Source: Octopus sinensis
Taxonomy: Eukaryota
DNA: 32,782 bases
Direction: 5' to 3'
Assembly: GCF_006345805.1 (NCBI RefSeq)
Contig: NW_021827509.1
Location: 1 to 32,782, forward strand
In this document: positions 1 to 31,760 of the stretch, piece after piece
Numbering within the stretch: the first letter of the stretch is position 1
Layout: each line of letters starts with the position of its first letter
Translations under genes and position numbers: made by a program
Notes under the pieces: generated by a model
Seen by the model: the letters and a program-made list of their open reading frames with translations, nothing else
What the model was told of the DNA's origin: nothing
Database searches by the model: none

Positions 1-191
1 GTGCTATATATGCAAGCTGGGACTTCGAAATTGGTAAAAAAATCACTCAATATGTGACCTAAACGTGTATTGCTTTGGAGAAGCTGAAATCCATTGATTC
101 GCAACTCTGAGTTTCAAGTCACCTTGTTATTCAGACGACTGACGTAGAGAGATATTTATTTATTAAACACGCGCTGAACAACTCATTTTCA

Positions 192-978
192 TCAGGTTTA
201 GTAAAAAGTAAGCAATGTTTTGAACCATGAAGAATTTGTACCGGATTTTTGCAGGATTTTGAACTTTTTTAAACATTTTTTGCAACTGTCTGATAATACA
301 AACATAGACTTACCCAAATGCATCAATAAATTAACATTGATATTTTTTCCACCGTTGTTACAATCATCTGAAATGGAACTGTCAAAGCGCGATATTCGAG
401 CAATTTTGCTATTCAACTTCAAAAAAGACGTAAAGCAGCTGAAACTGGTCGCGATATCAACGAAACATTTGGTGAGGAAATGACCAGTGAATGGTCAGCT
501 CGAAAATGGTTTAAACGATTTCGCAGTGGAGACCCGAGCCTTGAAGATCGTGAGCGTAGTGGATGCCCATCTTTCATTGATGACGGTCAGTTAAAGACTG
601 TCATCGAGAAACATCCACGTAAAACCACTTGAGAACTGACAAAAGAACTTCAAGTTAACCAGAAAACTGCCTGCAACCGTTTGCATGCGATCAGAAAATC
701 AAAAACCTCGACAAATGGGTACCATACGATTTGAACGAAAATCAGAAAATGTGCAGATATGAAATTTGCTCGTCACTTCTTCTCCATAACCCGACCGATC
801 CATTTCTCGACCGTATTGTAAAATATTTTTTATGTTACCGGAATAAACAAATTTGTAATTCGTTGGGAAAAATGTGTTGATTGTAACGGTACTTACTTTG
901 ATGAATAAAATTTCTGCATTGTTGAAATATATTGCGATAAATTTCGTGTTTCAAAATGTTGTTTACTTTTCACTTAGC

Positions 979-982
<4 letters not shown>
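192..982 (+). mobile_element. Internally deleted mariner (Tc1/mariner) element with both TIRs
   Basis: TIRs 192-226 (tcaggtttagtaaaaagtaagcaatgttttgaacc) and 948-982 are imperfect reverse complements. The right end is followed by TA that runs into a (TA)n tract. A transposase remnant lies inside. Confidence 0.9.
373..908 (+). pseudogene. Mariner transposase pseudogene: N-terminal HTH region joined to C-terminal tip, catalytic core missing
   Basis: Across frameshifts it reads MELSKRDIRAILLFNFKK / RKAAETGRDINETFGEE..ARKWFKRFRSGDPSLEDRERSG / KLDKWVPYDL (WVPHEL motif) ..FLDRIV. At ~820 it jumps to FYVTGINKFVIRWEKCVDCNGTYFDE*. Confidence 0.88.
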
Positions 983-1014
<32 letters not shown>

Positions 1015-1015
<1 letters not shown>

Positions 1016-1216
1016 TTTATTTTAAGCAGCAGAAAATTCAACAAAATCTGTTACTCTGAGTTTCTCGTTGCCATTCGTCTGATGAACGGCAACGAGAAAC
1101 TCAGAGTAACAGATGATTTTGTTGAATTTTGCTGCTTAAAATAAAGCATATTACTCTACCACTGGTATTTGAGTACTCTTTTTTTCCACCTTGTTTCACA
1201 TTTAGGTGTTACTCCG
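1015..1216 (+). mobile_element. PLE-LTR-like fragment with 5' inverted arm (hairpin 1015-1146); second copy ~2017-2222
   Basis: 1015-1078 is the near-perfect reverse complement of ~1081-1146. The fragment carries a hammerhead-like core and has (TA)n on both sides. Confidence 0.65.
1079..1110 (+). ncRNA. Type I hammerhead-like motif, degenerate (second copy 2076-2113)
   Basis: CTGATGA-ACG GCAA CGA-GAAA-CTC A GAG-TA. Stem III is the palindrome ACTC-A-GAGT with a GUA site. Stem II is 2 bp with a GCAA loop but has an A.A mismatch at 10.1/11.1. Stem I is 2 bp in copy 1 and 4 bp (TCGT/ACGA) in copy 2. Confidence 0.5.
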
Positions 1217-1981
1217 GCTATATATATATATATATATATATATATTCGTATGCTAAAATTACGTAATGTTTTTACATTCAATCTCGTATCTCAAAAATTA
1301 ATTTGGCATATTATAATGATAATTAAACAAAAACTTTTTCCAATTTTTTTTTTTACCTCTGCAATTTCACGAAAACTATCTTTTCACATTGCATGCCAAT
1401 ATTCTGCAGTTATTAGTAATGAATACATGATATTTTGGTGTCTTTTTGCAGGTAAATAAATGAAAATATGTTATGTGCCTAACATTTGAATTTAGGAAAG
1501 CATGATACATTTATCGGTTTCGTTGCGTATTCAGTTAAATCCCTCTGTATACGCCCTTGCGAATATATTTGCTTATACTATGTCACGCTTCTTTCCCACT
1601 TGAAACATATGAATGAACGACAACATAAACTGAATTTTATAATTCATGGCGATTCAGATTTATAAACGGAACCAAAGGAAGCTTGGAACCAGATTGACGC
1701 AAAAGCTGCCAAGCTGGATTCCAAAGAATTGCAAAAGGAATAGGACAGGAACAGAAAAGAAAAAATGGAAATGAATCGAGAGAAAATAACTGACAAAAAT
1801 AAAACTCAGGCCAGAATGTTATCGCAAGATAAGAAGGGACATGTAACATGAGGTGAGAGAACAGTGGCGGATTATATACTGTATATGTGTGTGGATCCGC
1901 GTGAATATGTTCGCCCGCACACGTGTTTGTAAATACGTGTATATGTATGTACGTTATGGTATATATATGTATGTATATATG

Positions 1982-2016
<35 letters not shown>

Positions 2017-2981
2017 CTTATTTTAAGCAGCAGAAAATTCAACAACACTCTTTACTCTGAGTTTCTCGTTGCCATTCGTCTGATGAACGGCAACGAGAAA
2101 CTCAGAGTAACGATTTTGTTGAATTTTCTGCTGTTAAAATAAAGCATATTACTCTACCACTGGTATTTGAGTACTCTTTTTTTCCACCTTGTTTCACATT
2201 TATGTGTTTTACTAACCTCCGGTCTATATATATATATATAATAATATATTCGTATGCTAAATTACGTAATGTTTTTACATTCAATCTCGTATCTCAAAAA
2301 TTAATTTGGCATATATAATGATAATTAAACAAAAACTTTTTCCATTTTTTTTTTTACCTCTCAATTTCACGAAAACTATCTTTTCACATTGCATGCCAAT
2401 ATTCTGCAGTTATTAGTAATGAATACTGATATTTTGGTGTCTTTTTGCAGGTAAATAAATGAAAATATGTTATGTGCCTAACATTTGAATTTAGGAAAGC
2501 ATGATACATTTATCGGTTTCGTTGCGTATTCAGTTAAATCCCTCTGTATACGCCCTTGCGAATATAATTTTGCTTATACTAGATCACGCTTCTTTCCCAC
2601 TTGAAACATATGAATGAACGACAACATAAACTGAATTTTATAATTCATGGCGATTCAGATTTAAAACGGAACCAAAGGAAGCTTGGAACCAGATTGACGC
2701 AAAAGCTGCCAAGCCTGGATTCCAAAGAATTGCAAAAGGAATAGGACAGGAACAGAAAAAGAAATATATGGAAATTGAATCGGAGAAAATAACTGACAAA
2801 AATAAAACTCAGGCCAGAATGTTATCGCAAGATAAGAAGGTGGCATGTAACATGAGGTGAGAGAACAGTGGCGGATTATATACTTGTATATGTGTGTGGA
2901 TCCGCGTGAATATGTTCGCCCGCACACGTGTTTGTAAATACGTGTATATGTATGTACGTTTATGGTATATATATGTATGTA

Positions 2982-3028
<47 letters not shown>

Positions 3029-3124
3029 TCATAATTTTTTTATATATACTCATAATTTTAAATTGAAGAAAATATTGTTATCGTATCAAAAATTGTTTAC
3101 AAATATTTTACAAACATATATTGG

Positions 3125-4124: not shown

Positions 4125-4172
4125 AAAATATATGTATATATATATATATATATCTATATATATTATATATTA

Positions 4173-4219
<47 letters not shown>

Positions 4220-4339
4220 TATAAAATAGTAAAAAGTGAAAAAACTACAGAAGGCTTGTTTAAAGGTTAAAAAATATATATTTGAGTCAATATGTCTGAA
4301 GAATGTTATAAATTTTTTTCTTACAATGACATAGTTTAG

Positions 4340-4379
4340 AAGAAATGACCGGTTTCGCGTTCAGCTTTTCAAATTTCTT
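4340..4379 (-). ncRNA. Type I hammerhead ribozyme, U3-A8 core variant
   Basis: Minus strand: AAGAAAT-TTGAAAA-GC TGAAC GC-GAAA-CCGG-TC-ATTTCTT. Perfect 7-bp stem I, 2-bp stem II, palindromic stem III ACCGGT and a GUC site. Confidence 0.75.
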
Positions 4380-4381
4380 AC

Positions 4382-4435
4382 ATCGTTATGTTTACGTTGA
4401 GAAGAGTTATCGTTATGTTTATGTTGAGAAGAGTT
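4382..4435. repeat. 27-bp tandem duplication in the PLE 3' region
   Basis: atcgttatgttta(c/t)gttgagaagagtt x2 (4382-4408 and 4409-4435). Confidence 0.9.
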
Positions 4436-5362
4436 CCAGATAAGGGGAAGTAATAAGTGATTTCTTCCGATGTAAGGGAGATAATCGCTTAAAATTTTTG
4501 TCTTTCCTTTGGAGTGAATTTCTCTGTATAAGTATGTTGGAATGGTTAAGTCTGGGCTTGTACTTCTCAATGAAGAATGTTTCCTTGTTTAGTCTAATTT
4601 GTGTTGGTGTTCCGATAGCACATTGGTAAAATGGAAAGATTAAAAATTGTGGTAGTAGTTGCTTTGCGCATTTCTCAATGTGCTTACTAAAGGGTATCAT
4701 TCTGTATTCTGGGAATGCAATCTGTTGTCGGTGCAGTGTGCATCTACGTCTGAGTGATAGTCCCGTGGATCCCACGTAGTCTTGGTGGCAGCCCGAGCAT
4801 TTTATGACATAAATTATGTTTTCAGAGGCACAAGTAAAATTAGATTTGATCTTAAATTTCTGTCCATCTTTGAAGAGGAATTCTGATCCTTCTAGCAGGT
4901 TTGGACATGTTGCACAGTTCGATCTACCACATTTTTTACTTTTGCATCCGTAATTTCCGAAAACAATTTTGCCTTTGTGAGAATCTTTTTAAGTGATTTA
5001 GGTTGTTTGTAGCTCTTAATGATTTGGTGTATGTTTAGAATTTCCTTTAATTTGGGGTCCTTATGAAGTATTGGTAAATTCTGGGTGATGATGGGGAAGG
5101 CTTCTTTGTTTCTGGGGTTGTATGTAGATATGTAAGGTAGTATTTTCGGGGAAGGTGTGTTGTTGTGTTGAACTTTTCTTAAAGTTTCTATGTTGATTTC
5201 TGTTGCACGTCTGATCCCATCCTCTATGAGTTGAGCTGGGTAATGTCTGTCAATTAGGGTGTTTTTGAGTTCTTGCAGTCTAAAGTTCCTGGTATTTTGT
5301 TCTGACACTATTGTGCATATCCTTCTTGCAAGGTTGAAGGGGATGTTTGTTTCAGTGTGTTT
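4419..5362 (-). pseudogene. PLE polyprotein C-terminal portion with GIY-YIG endonuclease (one frameshift at the T-run 4932-4937)
   Basis: Track ORFs 4892..5308 and 4419..4775 join into one frame if the A6 run is read as A7. The GIY-YIG motif is seen as IIY..DYVG. Confidence 0.88.
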
Positions 5363-5472
5363 GCACAGTTCGGTCTATCATATTTTTTTTACTTTTGCAT
5401 CCGTAATTTCAGAAAACAATTTTGCCTTTGTGAGAATCTTTTTAAGTGATTTAGGTTGTTTGTAGCTTTTAA

Positions 5473-6027
5473 TGAAAGGAACAAGAAAAAATAGACAGAG
5501 AGAGAATAAAAAACTTTTGGGGTTAGCGGTCAAGCATGGCGACTGGTTGGAAAAGAAGGGTGCCAATGAAGAGAGAAGGTGGGTAAGAGTGAAGCGAGGA
5601 AGTAGGTGTCAGAGGAAGAGAGGAGAAGAAACGTGGGTAGGAGTGAAGAGAACTTTTATGGTGCTTATAGCTGGAAAACAATACCATTCTATTGTAATAA
5701 TACTTAAAATTTCTTCTATCAAACTTACACTGTTCTCGGTTCTGTTTATGGCTTCGGCTATCAACAGAGTTTAAGGCATCTAGCCTCATCTAGCCGACGA
5801 GGACTAACCAGATTTACAATAACAAGCATATTCTGGAAAGTCCGAAAATCGAGTACTAGGTTATCCACTTTTCTCTGGCGTTTCTCCTAGTAGTAAGACG
5901 AAATTTTTTTTATATTCGCTTCCCGCACACGTATTTGCCCCTATACATTCAACGAAGCTTTACAATAGCGTCGTACGGTTATCGACTTCTATTTCCAGCA
6001 AAGAGTGGTACCTTGTGCCACTATTTC

Positions 6028-6030
<3 letters not shown>
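5473..6030 (+). mobile_element. PLE-LTR/retrozyme-like fragment in opposite orientation to the PLE ORF
   Basis: Contains the hammerhead-like motif at 5788-5861. Its 3' part (gaagctttacaatagcgtcgta..tatttccag..ggtac..ttgtgcca) resembles 21920-22000. It ends in (TA)n. Confidence 0.6.
5788..5861 (+). ncRNA. Type I hammerhead-like motif with long stem II (U4C core change)
   Basis: ATCTAG-CCGACGA-GGACT aa CCAGA..TCTGG aa AGTCC-GAAA-ATCGAG-TA-CTAGGT. 6-bp stem I, 5+5-bp stem II, near-palindromic stem III and a GUA site. Confidence 0.62.
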
Positions 6031-6102
<72 letters not shown>

Positions 6103-6399
6103 GTGTGTGTGTATGCATTTATACATATTTAACAAAGTATATGAAACTAAGGATGTGTAAATATATATACAATACATATATGTGTGTGTTACTGTGTACG
6201 TGTGTATGTATATGTTTTTAAAAATACATATAATACATACATAGTTGAATTTAGGTTGAAGCTACTGCACTAGTAGCAACAACAACAACATGCTAATATC
6301 AATCTGTTTCATTTCAGTTTTCCAATGAAGGAATATGAGGAAATAGAATCTCAGATTTCATCACGTGTTTCTGTAGGAAATATTAAGTAAACTCACCCG

Positions 6400-7114: not shown

Positions 7115-7479
7115 TTTTATTCTTTTATTTGTTGCAGTCATTTAACTGCGGCCACGCTGGACCACCGCCTTCAATCGAACAAACTGACCCCTGGATTTAT
7201 TCTTTGTAAGGCTAGTATCGGCCTCTTTTGCCAAACGGCTCATTTACGGGGGACGTAAACTCACGAACATCGGTTGTCAAGCGATGGTGGGGGAGAAACA
7301 CAGACACAATCATATACATATATTTTTTTCTGTTTCCGTCTGCCAAATCCACTCAAAAGGCTTTGGTCGAACCGAGGCTATAGTAGAAGACACTTGCCCA
7401 AGGTGCCATGCAGTGGGACTGAACCCGGAGCAATGTGGTTGGTAAGCAAGCTACTTACCACAAATCCACTCCTGCGCCT
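7112..7479 (-). mobile_element. Near full-length tRNA-derived SINE (OR/CORE-like)
   Basis: Minus strand has the head aggcgcaggagtgg..ggttcagtcccactgc, the core caccttgggcaagtgtcttctactatagcc and a (aataaaag)n tail. Confidence 0.9.
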
Positions 7480-7551
7480 ATCTTATACACACATATACAT
7501 ATATATATTTAAGTATGTATGTATGCAGTTTGTATACGTGTATATGTAAAT

Positions 7552-8459: not shown

Positions 8460-8929
8460 AAGTAGTGAGGTGTTGGATGACTTAAAGTTGGCACGTTATG
8501 GATTATAGCAGTGATTGGAGCTGATTTTTAATGGATTCTTAGGAATGTAATATTTGCGTGTGTATTTGTGTTATTCTAAGGCCGAGATGGATATGTCGTT
8601 TGTCGTAGTCGCGTTCAGAAGGGGCCTGTATTTTGTAATAAAGAGAGTTTCTTTACTAATTCGTTGCCTCCAGGTTGTTTGTCCCTGAATTGGTAGAGGG
8701 GGAAAATCTTGATGCTTGGAGTTTTGTTGTTGGCGCAAATGTCTATGTATAGAGGTGGGTGTTACTGTAGCTTGTAGCCCCAGGAGAACATCGTCTCCAG
8801 CTGGCTTTAGGTACACTAAGGGCACAGAAAGTGTGCCTAAGCCAGCTGGAGACGATGTTCTCCTGGGGCTACAAGCTACAGTTACACCCACCCTTAGTGG
8901 TTAGCCATATTGAGATGGCTAGTATACCT

Positions 8930-9433: not shown

Positions 9434-9497
<64 letters not shown>

Positions 9498-9516
9498 ATG
9501 TATATATATATATATG

Positions 9517-9564
<48 letters not shown>

Positions 9565-9569
9565 TACAC

Positions 9570-9600
<31 letters not shown>

Positions 9601-9608
9601 ATATATAT

Positions 9609-9652
<44 letters not shown>

Positions 9653-9776
9653 CAATTAAGGACAACTACTTAATAAGGAAAACTTAACAAGAAATTGTCA
9701 GGTAGATAGCGTGAAAACTCATAAGAGAAAAAATTTCGAAAATAATTATTCTTATTGAACATATTAATTATATATA

Positions 9777-10172
9777 GAGGGCATTATACATACATGCCAG
9801 AAGGCATTATACATACATGCCACACGCTAAGAGGGACAATTAGTCATTTCTACCAAAAATATACTAATCCCACCGAATGCAATTTTTCAAAGTAAGACAT
9901 TTAAAAAATATAGACCTGTATCACAGTGATTTCATACTTACGTATTCATCAGCAGGCCTGAATGCATTATAAATAAACGACCCTGCCCCGCTTATTAAGC
10001 CGATCAGCTAACTGATCAACATCAACGAAGCACATGGGTGAGTTTACATATATTACATCCGGATAAATGGCAAACTTTTACGAATTGCATTTCGGGAGAG
10101 CGTGGGTGTGGCATGTATGTATAATGCCTTGGCATGTATGTATAATGCCTTCTGGCATGTATGTATAATGCC

Positions 10173-10175
<3 letters not shown>
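9777..10175. mobile_element. 399-bp element with perfect 46-bp terminal inverted repeats (MITE-like; GAG..CTC termini, TATA flanks)
   Basis: 9777-9822 is the exact reverse complement of 10130-10175. The repeats are built of ggcattatacatacatgcc units (2 left, 3 right). There is no coding capacity. The termini resemble those of Sola elements (inference). Confidence 0.75.
9912..9959 (-). ncRNA. Canonical type I hammerhead ribozyme
   Basis: Minus strand: AGGCCTG-CTGATGA-ATAC GTAA GTAT-GAAA-TCAC T GTGA-TA-CAGGTCT. 7-bp stem I (one G.U), 4-bp stem II with a GNRA loop, palindromic stem III ATCAC-T-GTGAT, intact core and an AUA site (cut between 9919 and 9918). Confidence 0.88.
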
Positions 10176-10217
<42 letters not shown>

Positions 10218-10232
10218 TATATAATATATATA

Positions 10233-10281
<49 letters not shown>

Positions 10282-15180: not shown

Positions 15181-15969
15181 CTTTTTTTTCTTCTTTCAAA
15201 TTTGCCATCATTTCTTGCCGAGTGTCTTCCCGACTCCTAGGGCAAAGAAACTCATAGTATACATTGGTAGGCCATTAAACCAAACTCAGTAGTTCGTCAT
15301 TTTTTTTTTTTTTAAAGTTAATTAAAATACATGAGCAGCAACAGTTCTCACATCGACAATGCTCTTCTCAATACGTGTGATGTACCAGTTAAGACAATCT
15401 TTTGCACTTCTTGCAGGGATGGTAAGCCAGGGATCATTCTCATATAATTTTCGGTTCCCTTCTTGATCATTCCTAGTGCTCCTACGATCACTGGTATTGT
15501 AACCGCCTTGAGATGCACATTTTCTCAATTTCAATGAGTAGGTCTTTATATTTTCTGAGCTTGTCAAACTCTTTCGCTGAGATATTATGATCACAGGGGA
15601 TGCTCATGTCGATCAATAAGCAAACTTTATTGTTTTGGTCTTTCACAACAATATCTGGTTTATTGGCCTTGATGGTTCGGTCTGTATGTACTGGAAAGTC
15701 CCACAGAATGGTTACATTTTCTCCTTCAGTTACAGCCTCAGGGTGGTGATTATACCACTTGTCAGCAGTTTTGATATTGTAATGCCGACTTATTAGCCAG
15801 TGGAGATATTGGCCAACTCTGTCATGTCTTAATTTATACTCCACTGGTGCTAAGACTTTACATCCAGAGATTAGGTGATCCACTGTTTCAATCATGTCGT
15901 TGCAGAATCGGCATTTTGGGTCTGCTCCATTTTTCATCACATTGGCCTGGTAGTTCCGAGTTAATAGGC

Positions 15970-16935: not shown

Positions 16936-17354
16936 GCGAGTAGCCGTGTAGTAAGTTGCTTGTTTACCAACCACGTTGTTCCGGGTTCAGTCCAACTGCG
17001 TGGAACCTTCGGCAAGTGTCTTCTACTATAGCTTCGGGCCGACCAAAGCCTTGTGAGTGGATTTGGTAGACAGAAACTGAAAGAAGCCCGTCGTATATAT
17101 GTATGTATATATATGTGTGTGTGTATGTGTGTGTGTATATGTTTGTGTGTCTCTGTTTGTCCCCCCAACATCGCTTGACTGCCGATGCTGGTGTGTTTAC
17201 GCCCCCGTAACTTAGCGGTTCGGCAAAAGAAGTCACCGACAGAATAAGTACTGGGCTTACAAAGAATAAGTCCCGGGGTCGATTTGCTCGACTAAAGGCG
17301 GTGCTCCAAAATGGCCGCAGTCAAATGACTGGAACAAGTAAAAGAGTAAAAGAG
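16936..17354 (+). mobile_element. Near full-length tRNA-derived SINE (OR/CORE-like)
   Basis: Head with B-box-like gggttcagtcc, core ggcaagtgtcttctactatagc and tail ggcggtgctcc..atggccgcagtcaaatgactggaacaa(gtaaaaga)n. Confidence 0.9.
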
Positions 17355-18593: not shown

Positions 18594-19012
18594 CTAGCTG
18601 ACGGGGACGTAAACACACCAGCAATGCTAGGGGGACAAACACAGACACACAAACACATACACAAACATATATACATATATATACATATATACGACAGGCT
18701 TCTATCAGTTTCCGTCTACCAAATCCACTCACAAGGCATTGGTCGGCCCGAGGCTATAGTAGAAGACACTTGCCCAAGGTGACACGCAGTGGGATTGAAC
18801 CCGGAACCATGTGGTTGGTTGAAGACATCACTTTTTTTTTCGTTTTACGAATGAACAAATTTCAGCTAGCGGTTCGGCAAAAGAAACCGATAGAATAAGT
18901 ACTGGGCTTACAAAGAATAAGTCTCGGGGTCGATTTGCTCGACTAAAGGCGGTGCTCCAGCATGGCAGCAGTCAAATGACTGAAACAAGTAAAAGAGTAA
19001 AAGAGTAAAGAG
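18594..19012. mobile_element. Rearranged SINE: inverted 5' half (18594-18816), 47-bp insert, forward 3' half (18863-19012)
   Basis: The 5' half is on minus and the 3' half on plus. CAGCTAG is duplicated at the break, and the insert copies 18264-18311. Confidence 0.8.
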
Positions 19013-20643: not shown

Positions 20644-21114
20644 CATACATACATACATACATACATACATACAAATATATATATGCATGTATGTATGTAT
20701 GTATGTATGTATGTATGTATGTATATGTATGTAGCGTTTTCAACTCAAATCTATGAAGAGATTTTTTTTATCTCGGACGATTCCAAACTATTATGTCTGC
20801 TAACGGAATTGTATATAGAATGAAGTGGGCTACAGAGATGGCGATTATATATATATATATATAAATTAGTAATGCAATACTAGAGTATTGCCTTCCAGTA
20901 AAGAATAGCCCGTGAGGGAAAAATATACAAAGAAGTAAATATATGGCACAACGAAGTACCGATATTTACTTGAAATAGCGAACGTAATAATACGACGCTA
21001 ATGTATAGCTTCACCGCGTATGTACTAGCAAAAATGCGTGTGTGCAACAAACTAGAAAAAATTGTCTTACCTCCAGGGAGAACATCTGAAAGATGAAATA
21101 CCTGGAAACGGATA

Positions 21115-21194
21115 ATGTGGGACCTGCGCAGGTTTCGGATCTTTCAAGATATGTCTGCACCCATAAACTTGATCTATCTTCATCAGCCAAACAT
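21115..21194 (-). ncRNA. Type I hammerhead ribozyme with long stem II
   Basis: Minus strand: ATGTTTGG-CTGATGA-AGAT aga TCAAG..CTTGA aag ATCC-GAAA-CCTGCGCAGG-TC-CCACAT. Perfect 12-nt palindrome ACCTGCGCAGGT, GUC site, A.C at 10.1/11.1. Confidence 0.78.
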
Positions 21195-21740
21195 ATACCA
21201 CGACAAAATTTCAGATGTTACCACATTAATGCCATTACACTCGACTGAAACGCCGAAACGCTAACAGCACGAGAACAGTGAAGAAGTTTCAATAAATTAG
21301 TAATGCAATACTAGAGTATTGCTTTCCAGTAAAGAATAGCCCGTGAGGGAAAAATATACAAAGAAGTAAATATATGGCACAACGAAGTACCGATATTTAC
21401 TGGAAATAGCGAACGTAATAATACGACGCTAATGTATAGCTTCACCGCGTATGTATTAGCAAAAATTTATTCTAGTTTGTTGCACACACGCATTTTTGCT
21501 AGTACATACGCGGTGAAGCTATACATTAGCGTCGTATTATTACGTTCGCTATTTCCAGTAAATATCGGTACTTCGTTGTGCCATATATTTACGGGCTATT
21601 CTTTACTGGAAAGCAATACTTTAGTATTGCATTACTAATTTATTGAAACTTCTTCACCGTTCTCGTGCTGTTAGCGTTTCGGCGTTTCAGTCGAGTGTAA
21701 TGGCATTAATGTGGTAACATCTGAAATTTTGTCGTGGTAT

Positions 21741-21820
21741 ATGTTTGGTTGATGAAGATAGATCAAGTTTATGGGTGCAGACATATCTTGAAAAATCCGA
21801 AACCTGCGCAGGTCCCACAT
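21741..21820 (+). ncRNA. Type I hammerhead ribozyme, inverted copy with C3U
   Basis: Same as 21115-21194 but the core reads TTGATGA (21749-21755). Confidence 0.68.
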
Positions 21821-22006
21821 TATCCTTTTCCAGGTATTTCATCTTTCAGATGTTCTCCCTGGAGGTAAGACAATTTTTTCTAGTTTGTTGCACACACGCA
21901 TTTTTGCTAGTACATACGCGGTGAAGCTATACATTAGCGTCGTATTATTACGTTCGCTATTTCCAGTAAATATCGGTACTTCGTTGTGCCATATATTTAC
22001 TTCTTG

Positions 22007-22054
<48 letters not shown>

Positions 22055-28469: not shown

Positions 28470-29600
28470 ACTTGCACACACGCCAGCTGAATTTAATTCG
28501 CCATCAGTCGAAAGACACCTGTTGTTATGTCCAGTTATTTGTATTTTGTGTAACATTCTCTATTTTTTCTGTCCTTGTTTTCGTATACATTCGCTGATTT
28601 CTTCCAAGGAATCTAATGCTCTTAGCTTAGTTTTTTTCCTTAGGGCTGGCCAGATTGGAGCAATCTGGAGTATAACCAGCCGAAATTGCAAAGATAATCT
28701 GGAATTCGACTAAGGAAAGAAAACTCCGAATGACCTGTCTTTATTTTCTTTGTATCATTTATGTGGATGTTTTGTTGTCCCTTTTTTGTATCACCTAACT
28801 TTCTGGATGTTTTGCGTTCTTGTCCCATTTTGAATTATATATATAATATATATATAGTGGCGTACATACACTTTGGTCTGTTATATGTAAGTATATATTT
28901 ATCTAAATCTTGTACTTCTTTTATTCTTTCTTTCTTTTATTCTTTCCTTCTTTCTATCAGCCCTTTCACGCTTACTTCGCTTTTTCCACTCTTCGTTCTT
29001 TCGTTCACCCTCTCTCACATTTCCTTGCTTTCCCTTCATGCTCATTTTCCCTCCTCTTTTCACTACACTGTGTTCCTGTCATTTTATCTCGCCCCTCCTT
29101 ATTTCTTCTGTCCCTCTGCCTCTACCTCTCTTTCTTCTCTCCCCATGTGACTGGTGTTCGGCTAAGACTAACCTTTCTTTCTTGGTTCGGCCACCGTCCG
29201 TGTAACATCTATATTCCTCCCTGTGCCTGTAAAACCTCGTATCCCTACCGTAAGGCTTTAATTCCACACACGCCAGCTTAATTTAATTCGCCATTATTCG
29301 ACAAACACCTGTTGTTATGTCCTATTATTTGTATTTGTGTACCATTTCTCCGTTTTTTCCGTCCTTCTTTTCGTATATATTCGCTGATTTCTTCCAAGGA
29401 ATCTAATGCTATTAGCTTTCCTTTGGGGCTGGCCAAATTAGAGCAATCTCGAGTATAACCAGCTGAAATTGCAAAGATATTCTGGAACTCGATTGAGGAA
29501 AGAAAACTCCGAATGACCCGTCCTTGTTTTCTTTGTATCGTCTACCTGGATGTTTTGCTGGCCCTTTTTTGCGTTCTCGCTCTATTTTGTATTTTTTATA

Positions 29601-29622
<22 letters not shown>
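28470..29622 (+). repeat. Two diverged direct copies of a ~350-bp interspersed repeat (28470-28845 and 29262-29622)
   Basis: Shared cacacacgccagc..ttcttccaaggaatctaatgct..gaaattgcaaagata..ggaaagaaaactccgaatgacc. Both end near (TA)n, like the PLE-LTR pieces. Confidence 0.85.
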
Positions 29623-29664
<42 letters not shown>

Positions 29665-29666
29665 AC

Positions 29667-31018
29667 CTATATCTCTGACCTCACACATCAGCAAAGTCAT
29701 GGAACAAATAGTCCGCAAGAAACTAATCATGTTCCTTGAAGAAAATGACTTGCTGTCTGACACCCAGCATGGATTTCGACCAGGTAGAAGCTGCCTAACA
29801 CAGTTCCTGCAACACTATGACTGGGTGTTAAAACAGCTGCTAAATGGCTCAAATGTGGATGTGATATATCTCGACTTCGCAAAAGCCTTTGATAAAGTCG
29901 ACCACGGTATGATCTATCACAAACTGCGTGGTCTCGGCATAGGCGGAAAACTTGGAGAGTGGTTGCACAACTTCCTAAAAGACAGAAGACAGGCAGTTGT
30001 GAGCAATGGAGCCACCTCCAAGGAAACACAAATAACAAGCGGTGTTCCACAGGGCACTGTCTTGGGGCCACTCCTGTTCATAGTGGCCCTTTCAGACATG
30101 CCCTCAGTTGCTACGATCGCCACCCTTGCTAGCTATGCAGATGACACAAAAGTCTCCCACACAATACAAAACCCTGAAAATATTGCGCATCTGCAACAGG
30201 AGTTGAATACAATATACAGGTGGGCTGAGGACAGCAACATGCAGTTTAATGCAGGTAAGTTCCAGGACCTGCGCTACCGGCACACAAAGGTAAACGACGT
30301 GCAGACTGGATACACTAGCCCAGGAAGAATTGTAATCCCTGAGTCAAAATCAGTGCGTGACCTGGGCATTGACATGAGCAATGATGCATCTTTCCAAGTG
30401 CATATCACTAATCTGATGATAAAATGCAGACGGCTAGCTGGATGGATTCTCCGAACTTTCAGAACAAGAGAGAAGGAGACATTGATAGTCCTCTGGAAAA
30501 CATTCGTCCTCAGACGCTTGGACTACTGCTCCCAACTATGGTCACCACACAATATAAAACTAACAGCAGAACTCGAAGCAATTCAAAGAAGCTACACAAA
30601 GAAGATCATCTCAATGCAAAATATCAGCTACTGGGAAAGACTGAAAGTATTAAACCTTTTCTCCCTAGAGCGAAGGCGGGAGAGATATGAAGTGATATAC
30701 ATCTGGAAAATCCTGGAGGGTCTTGTCCCAAACTTTGGTATTCAAAGTTACCCCAACCGCAGAACGGGGCGCCACTGCATGGTGCCAAAGATTCCAACAT
30801 CACCATCAAAATACAGGTCCAGATACTGCAACAGCTTGGGTTTCAGAGGACCACAGATCTTTAACATCCTCCCTAAATGCCTGAGAGACTTACATGGTGT
30901 GGTTGTGGGTTTCTTTAAAACTAAACTGGATCTCTTCTTGTCGGGGGTCCCAGATGAACCTACCTCACGACAGGAGACACAGATGCGGGCAGCGGCATCG
31001 AACTCCCTTGTTGATTAA
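29667..31018 (+). CDS. Reverse transcriptase and C-terminal domain of a CR1-type LINE ORF2 (uninterrupted ~450 codons, no true start)
   Basis: Reads [66 protein letters not shown]. The first ~50 aa of the track ORF come from flank and microsatellite. Confidence 0.93.
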
Positions 31019-31432: not shown

Positions 31433-31488
31433 ATATATATATATATATATATACATACATACACATATATATATATATATGAATACAT

Positions 31489-31652
31489 AGGCGCAGGAGC
31501 GGCTGTTTGGTAAGTAGTTTCTTTACCAACCACATGGTTCTGGGTTCAGTCCAACTGCCTGGCACCTTGGGCAAGTGTCTTCTACTACAGCCTTGGGCCG
31601 ACCAAAGCCTTGTGACTGGATTTGATAGACGGAAACTGAAAGAAGCCAGTCG

Positions 31653-31685
<33 letters not shown>

Positions 31686-31760
31686 TTGTGTCTGTGTGTC
31701 TGTTTGCGTACCCCCAACATCGCTTGACAATCGATGCTGGTGTATTTGCATACCCCGGTT
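31489..31760 (+). mobile_element. SINE 5' part (OR/CORE-like)
   Basis: aggcgcaggagcggctg..gggttcagtcc..caccttgggcaagtgtcttctact. Confidence 0.88.

What the first reader, a model, noticed from the sequence alone, without database searches (positions are those of the whole stretch)
9777..10175. Fully canonical hammerhead ribozyme inside an element with perfect terminal inverted repeats
Seen: the minus strand at 9959-9912 folds into a textbook type I hammerhead with an intact CUGAUGA/GAAA/UA core, 7-bp stem I, AUAC-GUAA-GUAU stem II and palindromic AUCAC-U-GUGAU stem III. It sits centrally in a 399-bp non-coding element whose terminal 46 bp are exact inverted repeats with GAG..CTC ends and TATA flanks. 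Established: eukaryotic type I hammerheads with palindromic stem III belong to Penelope-like retroelements and retrozymes, not cut-and-paste MITEs. Inference: this is either a DNA-transposon MITE carrying a self-cleaving ribozyme (possibly a captured PLE LTR now spread by a transposase), or a head-to-head PLE-LTR insertion whose two 3' ends mimic TIRs. The identical TIRs and unmutated core suggest recent activity.
Basis: partly seen in the sequence, partly recalled or inferred. Interest (0 to 1): 0.85.

Follow-up and report, generated by a model that had tools for sequence, protein, structure and literature searches.

The report
Hammerhead ribozyme in short inverted-end retroelement
A real minimal hammerhead ribozyme motif sits in a 399-bp non-coding insert in a (TA)n microsatellite; its perfect inverted ends are most likely the two 3' ends of a head-to-head Penelope-type retroelement insertion, a known pattern, and less likely the ends of a DNA-transposon MITE.

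Summary
The minus strand 9959-9912 has every invariant hammerhead core base and three helices. It is the only match in the window, and none turned up in 300 shuffles or in 122 Mb of random sequence at the observed stem lengths. The 46-bp termini are exact inverted repeats. It is a minimal, Penelope-type hammerhead, not a textbook one. Helix III is not stable as a monomer but pairs as a dimer, and no Rfam model matches.

The context favours a Penelope-like (PLE) retroelement origin. Two PLE coding remnants lie within 6 kb. A second non-coding element at 20861-22009 also sits in (TA)n. It shows the classic PLE layout: two head-to-head copies longer than one unit, a one-sided tail, and a hammerhead-like motif in each arm. 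In these elements the ribozyme-sense 3' end abuts a (TA)n array 123-255 nt past the ribozyme.

I read the 'TIRs' as two copies of the element's 3' terminus, which is built of 23-nt hairpin units (confidence about 0.58). A true MITE is not excluded (about 0.2). The arms show an identity gradient that a one-event insertion does not predict, and no other copy could be retrieved. Verdict: new member of a known kind, moderate to low interest.

The parts
9777..10175 (-). E1: the whole 399-bp non-coding element. The strand given is that of the hammerhead-sense RNA.
   Evidence: Bounded by exact inverted termini and TA-repeat flanks. No ORF longer than 46 aa. No PLE coding remnant by tblastn. The RNA folds into a long rod, -181 kcal/mol, z = -15.5, with the hammerhead as a side branch.
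9912..9959 (-). Type I minimal hammerhead motif. H17 = A at 9919; predicted cleavage between 9919 and 9918.
   Evidence: Read directly. The only descriptor hit in the window, with 0 in 300 shuffles. At stems of at least I 7, II 4 and III 4 bp, 0 hits in 122 Mb of random sequence. No Rfam hit.
9777..9822 (-). Left terminus: two tandem 23-nt units, each a GGCAU-N9-AUGCC hairpin. Proposed 3' end (reverse-transcription start region) of the main copy.
   Evidence: The functional reading is an inference from PMC11167929.
10109..10175 (+). Right terminus: three units (21 + 23 + 23 nt). The outer 46 nt (10130-10175) are the exact reverse complement of 9777-9822.
10099..10175 (+). Proposed short inverted 5'-truncated second copy (about 77 nt), primed on the other DNA strand.
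   Evidence: Inference. Homology to the reverse complement of the left end runs through the units and the shared CACGCU/AGCGUG, then stops.
9873..9904 (.). Inner inverted repeat, left half.
   Evidence: 25/32 complementary to 10066-10097; 0 of 500 shuffles reach the score.
10066..10097 (.). Inner inverted repeat, right half.
10002..10017 (.). Central palindrome GATCAG-CTAA-CTGATC, which forms the tip of the rod in the RNA fold.
10176..10281 (.). Right flanking (TA)n array, the target microsatellite.
9437..9651 (.). Left (TA)n array, separated from E1 by a unique 117-bp stretch (9652-9768) and 7-8 nt of TA (9769-9776).

Best explanation
E1 is a short, non-coding retroelement insertion of the Penelope-like-element (PLE) / non-LTR-retrozyme kind, lodged in a (TA)n microsatellite.

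The RNA sense is the minus strand. The main copy runs from about 10098 (5') to 9777 (3'). It carries one minimal type I hammerhead 142 nt upstream of its 3' end. That 3' end consists of tandem 23-nt hairpin units, which I take to be where a PLE reverse transcriptase starts copying.

PLE enzymes nick and extend both strands of AT-rich target DNA. A second, very short cDNA (about 77 nt, 10099-10175) started at the same RNA site on the opposite strand and was joined 5' end to 5' end with the first. The two outer ends are therefore the same sequence in opposite orientation and look like TIRs.

The hammerhead is the family's usual passenger or processing motif. With a palindromic helix III it would cleave only when two copies pair (tandem transcripts or in trans) or with protein help. 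This solo locus is probably a dead-end copy.

Shown: the motif, the inverted ends, the (TA)n setting, and PLE relics plus a clear PLE-style sister element in the window. Inferred: the mode of insertion, the start site of reverse transcription, and the position of the junction.
For: 1. Hammerhead type. It is minimal, with an open stem I and a palindromic helix III. This is the type reported in PLE pseudo-LTRs and scattered as solo motifs in metazoan genomes, sometimes as pairs 100-700 bp apart on opposite strands (PMC4209133).

2. Known PLE behaviour. PLE insertions typically carry an adjacent inverted 5'-truncated copy that creates inverted repeats, and several clades target (TA)n (PMC8557442). 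A purified PLE protein cleaves and extends both DNA strands at AT-rich sites. It starts reverse transcription at internal stem-loop sites about 90 nt 3' of the hammerhead cut (PMC11167929).

3. PLE relics in the window.
- 5500-4286(-) encodes a CX4CxxC linker and a GIY-YIG domain. It is 95% identical to P0001, and its relatives carry RVT_1 + HTH_animal + GIY-YIG. It ends at the (TA)n array 4128-4223.
- A second relic lies at about 8749-8681(-), inside the ORF 8571-8891.

4. Internal comparator E2 (20861-22009). It is non-coding and flanked by (TA)n on both sides. It consists of two head-to-head copies, each more than one unit long (unit about 431 nt), joined at their 5' ends. One end carries a 64-nt tail. 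Each arm has a hammerhead-like motif with the palindromic helix III ACCUGCGCAGGU.

5. Common geometry. The ribozyme-sense 3' end abuts (TA)n 123 nt (PLE relic), 142 nt (E1) and about 200-255 nt (E2) past the cut.

6. A more distant PLE of the same protein clade (L012) has a clean minimal hammerhead about 90 nt after its ORF stop.

7. E2's two arms also differ by a 23-nt indel. Indels between head-to-head partners therefore occur in this genome.
Against: - Beyond the exact 46 bp the arms differ by 21-nt, 4-nt and 39-nt indels. They then share an inner inverted repeat at only 78%. One event from one template predicts uniform identity. Such a gradient is what a MITE or foldback consensus looks like.
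- Both ends stop at exactly the same base, with no one-sided tail such as E2 has.
- E1 shows no tandem partial unit and no second hammerhead.
- E1 has no DNA similarity to the PLE relics or to E2 and no PLE coding remnant.
- No other copy of E1 could be retrieved, so nothing is known at family level.
- (TA)n arrays are very frequent here: 23 period-2 TA/AT rows in the TRF table for 32.8 kb. The (TA)n setting alone is weak evidence.
Confidence: 0.58

Rival explanations
1. E1 is a true class II MITE. A DNA transposase binds the 23-bp subterminal repeats and cuts and pastes the element. The hammerhead is cargo, for example a captured PLE 3' UTR fragment.
For: - Exact 46-bp TIRs built of repeated 23-bp units, as in many transposase-binding ends.
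- The arms are homologous over about 110-128 nt, with identity highest at the tips.
- Both ends terminate at the same base.
- The flanks allow a TA, TATA or TATATATA duplication.
- MITE-like size and AT-richness; the whole element folds as a hairpin.
Against: - No transposase gene and no second copy in the window.
- The target duplication cannot be read, because the flank is itself (TA)n.
- One full-text search of the paper library, for 'hammerhead ribozyme' with 'MITE', 'transposase' and 'inverted repeats', listed no report of a hammerhead-bearing MITE. All known animal type I hammerheads of this kind are tied to PLEs or retrozymes.
- The window shows that PLE-type insertion makes inverted-ended non-coding elements in (TA)n here (E2).
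- The termini GAG...CTC do not match the usual Tc1/mariner starts, a point that rests on my own knowledge.
Confidence: 0.2
2. The whole 399 nt is one RNA unit whose 5' and 3' ends are intrinsically complementary (a panhandle or rod, viroid- or retrozyme-like). It is copied end to end by a PLE reverse transcriptase. On this reading the TIRs are inherited from the template, not made at insertion.
For: - A rod-like fold with z = -15.5, with the hammerhead as an independent branch.
- The inner inverted repeat shows that the palindromic design is older than this insertion.
- Metazoan retrozymes are 170-400 nt in size (PMC7229834).
Against: - The mismatches in the inner repeat are not G-U compensated on either strand, so there is no sign of selection for RNA pairing. 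This comes from my own reading of the alignment.
- A perfect 46-bp duplex is unlike known retrozyme or viroid-like RNAs.
- There is no tandem copy, which would be needed to release a unit by double cleavage.
Confidence: 0.15
3. The hammerhead is a chance match inside an unrelated palindromic repeat.
For: - No Rfam hit.
- The local fold is no more stable than shuffles.
- Single copy, so no covariation support.
- The loose descriptor would give a few hundred chance hits in a genome of several Gb (rate).
Against: - At stems of at least I 7, II 4 and III 4 bp, 0 hits in 122 Mb of random sequence.
- About 0.005 expected per window, even for the loose descriptor.
- It lies in a PLE-rich window next to other hammerhead-like motifs in the same geometry.
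Confidence: 0.04

Closest known systems
Penelope-like element (PLE) insertions with an inverted 5'-truncated partner (Evgen'ev & Arkhipova; Craig et al. 2021, PMC8557442; Frangieh et al. 2024, PMC11167929)
   Same: A minimal hammerhead near the 3' end. Insertion into AT-rich or (TA)n DNA. Two copies joined 5' to 5', so that both outer ends are 3' ends. A terminal stem-loop region where reverse transcription would start.
   Different: E1 has no RT/EN ORF, no pseudo-LTR (partial tandem) and no one-sided tail. The partner copy is only about 77 nt. The arms differ by indels and share an older, diverged inner repeat.
Metazoan non-LTR retrozymes, non-autonomous PLE derivatives (Cervera & de la Pena 2020, PMC7229834; Li, Clavereau & Pollet 2026 preprint)
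   Same: A non-coding unit of 170-400 nt, low GC, a type I hammerhead, and solo 'monomer' copies scattered in genomes.
   Different: Retrozymes are defined by tandem repeats and mostly carry canonical hammerheads with loop-loop contacts in invertebrates. E1 is a single unit with a minimal hammerhead and perfect inverted termini.
Element E2 in the same window (20861-22009)
   Same: Non-coding, inside (TA)n, head-to-head inverted structure, hammerhead-type motif with a palindromic helix III, and a terminal hairpin near the 3' end.
   Different: E2 has copies longer than one unit (partial tandems), a hammerhead-like motif in both arms, 415-nt arms and a 64-nt tail at one end. It has no sequence similarity to E1.
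MITEs of DNA transposons (hAT, Tc1/mariner, Mutator-like)
   Same: Short, non-coding, AT-rich. Exact TIRs with subterminal repeats. Possible TA or 8-bp target duplication. Hairpin-forming.
   Different: No MITE is known to carry a hammerhead. No partner transposase, family or unambiguous target duplication has been shown.

Membership tests
Hammerhead ribozyme, type I (minimal / PLE-type) | Invariant core C3U4G5A6N7G8A9, G12A13A14, A15.1-U16.1, and H17 not G | tested here: met
   Read directly on the minus strand 9952-9919; descriptor hit.
Hammerhead ribozyme, type I (minimal / PLE-type) | Three helices around the core, with stem I open | tested here: met
   Stem I 7 bp; stem II 4 bp plus GUAA. 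Helix III is 4-5 bp and palindromic, stable only as a dimer (-10.1 kcal/mol against 0.0 for the monomer).
Hammerhead ribozyme, type I (minimal / PLE-type) | Match to a curated covariance model (Rfam hammerhead families) | tested here: not met
   No hit at gathering score or at E<=10. Two other hammerhead-type motifs of this kind in the window, the two arms of E2, also went unmatched, so this is a weak negative.
Hammerhead ribozyme, type I (minimal / PLE-type) | Self-cleavage at H17 | not testable with these tools
   Needs in vitro transcription of monomer and dimer constructs.
Hammerhead ribozyme, type I (minimal / PLE-type) | Core conserved and stems covarying among homologues | not testable with these tools
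   No homologue was retrieved.
PLE-type retroelement insertion | Hammerhead-sense 3' end abutting an AT-rich or microsatellite target | tested here: met
   The 3' end at 9777 abuts TA repeats, and the right end abuts (TA)53. The PLE relic and E2 show the same geometry.
PLE-type retroelement insertion | Inverted 5'-truncated copy joined 5' to 5' and identical to the 3' part of the main copy | tested here: inconclusive
   46 nt are identical and about 12 more are shared across 21-nt and 4-nt indels. Homology then ends, apart from a 78% inner repeat.
PLE-type retroelement insertion | Sequence homology of the hammerhead region to the UTR or pseudo-LTR of an autonomous PLE in the same genome | tested here: inconclusive
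   No similarity to the two PLE relics in the window or to L008. The source genome is not in any searchable collection.
Non-LTR retrozyme | Tandem repeats of the hammerhead-bearing unit (two or more) | tested here: not met
   E1 is a single unit with no tandem copy. At best it is a solo 'monomer' derivative.
MITE (class II) | Terminal inverted repeats | tested here: met
   46 bp, 100%.
MITE (class II) | Target-site duplication of fixed length | tested here: inconclusive
   The flanks read TATATATA on both sides, so 2, 4, 6 or 8 bp all fit and none can be proved. 9 bp does not fit.
MITE (class II) | Multi-copy family of uniform length, with an autonomous partner sharing the TIRs | not testable with these tools
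   No eukaryotic DNA collection is available. Protein-space and pattern searches found nothing.

The most novel reading that the evidence does not exclude
E1 is a genuine cut-and-paste MITE, or a PLE-derived element whose hard-wired TIRs let a DNA transposase cross-mobilise it, and it carries an intact self-cleaving hammerhead. That would be the first ribozyme-bearing DNA transposon family and a bridge between retroelement and DNA-transposon mobility.
Probability: 0.15. Interest if true: 0.8.

Novelty: new member of a known kind. Interest (0 to 1): 0.35.

Why it matters
If the favoured reading is right, this is one more solo PLE-type hammerhead insertion, in what looks like an octopod cephalopod genome. 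The kind is already described.

Its modest value lies in the very clean 3' terminus of tandem 23-nt hairpin units. Together with element E2 in the same window, it offers a compact natural substrate for asking two questions. Where do PLE reverse transcriptases start? How does priming on both strands create inverted ends in (TA)n microsatellites?

If the MITE reading were right instead, it would be a new class of ribozyme-carrying DNA transposon.

Tried and rejected
1. Rfam scans of the window at gathering score, and of E1 and E2 at E<=10, gave no hammerhead family, only hairpin-like miRNA noise.

2. Searches for further copies all failed.
- blastn of E1 against the rest of the window found nothing.
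- Exact 19-mer scans of metagenome, prokaryotic-genome and viral contigs gave only single hits. The one whose flanks I read (L001) is unrelated; the rest lie on bacterial or viral contigs, so I take them as chance.
- A 23-mer from the hammerhead found nothing in viral contigs.
- A concatenated six-frame translation of E1, searched against 5.8 billion proteins to catch spurious ORF calls in other copies, gave no hits.

3. Looking for the source genome by exact ORF look-up failed: 11 ORFs, none on record. So no empty site and no family analysis were possible.

4. Searches for a PLE coding remnant inside E1 or E2 by tblastn with 157 proteins (the PLE and LINE RT hits) gave nothing significant.

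5. A search for similarity of the 117-bp stretch 9652-9768 to anything else found none.

6. A search for an inverted partner next to the PLE relic at 5476-6110 found none.

7. Rejected: Helitron, because the ends are not TC...CTRR; and a 9-bp (Mutator-type) target duplication, because the flanks do not match at 9 bp.

8. I considered penaeid shrimp as the source because of the microsatellite load. The best named RT relatives are from Argonauta hians, so I dropped it.

Full report
**What is there**

The minus strand 9959-9912 reads AGGCCUG CUGAUGA AUAC GUAA GUAU GAA AUCAC U GUGAU A | CAGGUCU. All invariant hammerhead positions are present: C3-A9, G12-A14, A15.1-U16.1 and H17=A. Stem I is 7 bp with one G-U. 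Stem II is 4 bp closed by GUAA. Helix III is the palindrome AUCAC-U-GUGAU. The predicted cut lies between 9919 and 9918.

A descriptor scan that I wrote finds this site and no other in the window, and none in 300 dinucleotide-preserving shuffles. In 122 Mb of first-order Markov sequence with the window's composition, the loose descriptor hit 10 times, about 0.005 expected per window. Nothing reached stems of at least I 7, II 4 and III 4 bp; the site has 7, 4 and 5. The motif is therefore not a chance match.

It is, however, a minimal hammerhead and not a textbook one:
- Pair 10.1-11.1 is A-U.
- There is no loop 1 for tertiary contacts.
- Helix III is not predicted to form in a monomer (0.0 kcal/mol) but gives a 10-bp duplex between two copies (-10.1 kcal/mol).
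- The local minimum-energy fold pairs part of the core with the 5' strand of helix III and is no more stable than shuffles (z = -0.9).
- No Rfam hammerhead model matches, even at E<=10.

**The element (E1, 9777-10175)**

The ends 9777-9822 and 10130-10175 are exact reverse complements. Each is two tandem 23-nt units. Every unit contains the small hairpin GGCAU-N9-AUGCC. The right arm has a third, 21-nt unit at 10109-10129.

Aligning the left arm with the reverse complement of the right arm shows three things:
- The outer 46 nt are identical.
- A shared CACGCT follows the units, and here the right arm carries its extra unit and 4 further nt.
- After a 39-nt left-only stretch there is a second inverted repeat, 9873-9904 / 10066-10097. 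It matches at 25 of 32 positions, and 0 of 500 shuffles reach its score.

The mismatches in this inner repeat are not G-U compensated on either strand.

The whole RNA folds into a rod (-181 kcal/mol, z = -15.5) with the hammerhead as a side branch. There is no ORF above 46 aa and no PLE coding remnant.

The right flank is (TA)53. On the left only 7-8 nt of TA abut the element. A unique 117-bp stretch (9652-9768) follows, and then a long (TA)n array at 9437-9651. The flanks allow a duplication of 2, 4, 6 or 8 bp but prove none.

**Surroundings**

The window is eukaryotic and loaded with microsatellites: the TRF table has 23 period-2 TA/AT rows for 32.8 kb. The best named relatives of its LINE RT ORF (29513-31018) are from the octopod Argonauta hians at 60-62% identity. 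An octopod cephalopod is the likely source, but this is not established.

Two PLE coding relics lie on the same strand as the hammerhead.
- 5500-4286(-) encodes the RT-EN linker, a CX4CxxC finger and a GIY-YIG domain. It is 95% identical to a Logan-assembly protein, and its relatives carry RVT_1 + HTH_animal + GIY-YIG. It ends at the (TA)n array 4128-4223.
- A weaker relic lies at about 8749-8681(-), inside the ORF 8571-8891.

The 3' UTR of the first relic holds a hammerhead-like box set with a U3/A8 core: GAAAU UUGAAAA GC-N5-GC GAAA CCGG UC AUUUC, at 4377-4342(-). It lies 123 nt from the element's end, and Logan contig L008 has the same layout. Its stem II is only 2 bp, so I leave its status open.

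A more distant PLE of the same protein clade (L012) has a clean minimal hammerhead about 90 nt after the ORF stop: CUGAGGA GCCGC-AACA-GCGGU GAAA CGCG UA.

**The key comparator (E2, 20861-22009)**

A second non-coding element sits between two (TA)n runs. Self-comparison and alignment show two head-to-head copies joined at their 5' ends near 21465.
- Copy A (minus sense, 20861-21466) is one 431-nt unit plus 175 nt of a second unit.
- Copy B (plus sense, 21464-22009) is about 1.3 units.
- Copy A extends 64 nt further at its outer (3') end than copy B, a one-sided tail.
- The copies differ by a 23-nt indel and by 1-2% substitutions.

Each arm holds a hammerhead-like motif: GGCUGAUGA, a long interrupted helix II, then GAAACCUGCGCAGGUC. 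Its helix III is a perfect palindrome (dimer -23.5 kcal/mol). Copy B has C3 changed to U.

This is the complex tandem/inverted PLE architecture with a tail described by Craig et al. (PMC8557442). The biochemistry of Frangieh et al. (PMC11167929) explains it. The PLE protein nicks and extends both strands of AT-rich DNA. It starts reverse transcription at two internal sites in a stem-loop about 90 nt downstream of the hammerhead cut.

**Interpretation**

Animal type I hammerheads with a palindromic helix III are tied to PLEs and to their non-autonomous derivatives. They occur as solo motifs and as pairs on opposite strands (PMC4209133, PMC7229834, bioRxiv 10.64898/2026.07.22.740005).

In this window all three (TA)n-abutting elements share one geometry. 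The ribozyme-sense 3' end meets the microsatellite 123 nt (PLE relic), 142 nt (E1) or about 200-255 nt (E2) past the cut.

I therefore read E1 as a PLE-type insertion. The main copy is 9777 to about 10098 on the minus strand, and its 3' end is the tandem hairpin units. A roughly 77-nt second cDNA was primed on the other strand from the same start region. That makes the 'TIRs' two 3' ends.

The hammerhead would act only in dimeric or protein-assisted form. This solo locus is probably a dead end. Confidence is about 0.58.

**What does not fit, and the rivals**

A single two-strand event from one template should give uniform identity between the arms. Instead identity is 100% at the tips and 78% further in, with three indels. 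That is the pattern of a MITE or foldback consensus, or of an RNA unit with built-in terminal complementarity. E2 shows that indels between partners do occur, but not such a gradient.

E1 also lacks a tail, a partial tandem, a second hammerhead, and any similarity to the PLE relics or to E2.

I could retrieve no further copy:
- Pattern scans gave only single hits. The one whose flanks I read is unrelated, and the rest lie on bacterial or viral contigs.
- A six-frame translation found nothing among 5.8 billion proteins.
- The source genome is not in the exact-match collection.

The confidences I give:

| Reading | Confidence |
|---|---|
| PLE-type head-to-head insertion | ~0.58 |
| True MITE | ~0.20 |
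| Intrinsically palindromic retro-unit | ~0.15 |
| Chance motif | ~0.04 |

One full-text search of the paper library, for 'hammerhead ribozyme' with 'MITE', 'transposase' and 'inverted repeats', listed no report of a hammerhead-bearing MITE. That reading would be new if true.

**Verdict**

Of its two alternatives, the second is favoured.
- Novelty: a new member of a known kind.
- Interest: 0.35.
- The decisive test is a genome-wide census of copies, partners and empty sites, followed by cleavage and target-primed reverse-transcription assays.

Noticed in passing
window 20861-22009: E2, a non-coding composite element between two (TA)n runs. It has two head-to-head copies longer than one unit (unit about 431 nt), a 64-nt tail at the left end only, and a 23-nt indel between the copies. 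Each arm has a hammerhead-like motif with the palindromic helix III ACCUGCGCAGGU: about 21187-21118 (-) with CUGAUGA, and about 21749-21815 (+) with UUGAUGA. This is a textbook PLE/retrozyme-style insertion.
   Followed up: yes
window 4224-5500 (-), and about 8681-8749 (-) inside the ORF 8571-8891: Two PLE coding relics. The first has the RT-EN linker, a CX4CxxC finger and a GIY-YIG domain with one frameshift, plus a 115-bp internal duplication at 5361-5475. It ends at (TA)n 4128-4223. Its closest relative is Logan SRR9105617 protein P0001 (95% aa, 90% DNA).
   Followed up: partly
window 4342-4377 (-); L008 about 1150-1190: A hammerhead-like box set with a U3/A8 core and only a 2-bp stem II (GAAAU UUGAAAA GC-N5-GC GAAA CCGG UC AUUUC) in the PLE 3' UTR, 123 nt from the element end. 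L008 has the same layout, by my reading of the 3' flank printed (a later regex check failed). Differences fall only in loop II and at H17.
   Followed up: partly
L012 7427-7492 (ENA ERZ25071802 contig): A clean minimal hammerhead (CUGAGGA GCCGC-AACA-GCGGU GAAA CGCG UA) about 90 nt after the stop of a PLE ORF that is 44% identical to the window's relic. The element may end at a (CTTAT)n run about 290 nt further on.
   Followed up: partly
window 7324-7481, 16938-17151, 18620-18819, 31487-31724: A SINE-like dispersed repeat of 150-200 nt, 86-87% identical, in both orientations.
   Followed up: no
window about 1-3060: A tandem duplication of about 1005 bp (1880-1955 = 2885-2960 at 100%). It holds a pseudo-match of CTGATGA...GAAA at 1079 and 2080 that lacks hammerhead stems.
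   Followed up: no
window 29513-31018 (+) and 15488-15940 (-): A LINE-type RT ORF (RVT_1, E = 2e-26) flanked by (TA)n arrays; its best named relatives are from Argonauta hians (60-62%). There is also a separate ORF with a weak zf-RVT match.
   Followed up: partly
window 9652-9768: A unique 117-bp stretch that splits the (TA)n array just left of E1. It resembles nothing else in the window, and its origin is unexplained.
   Followed up: partly
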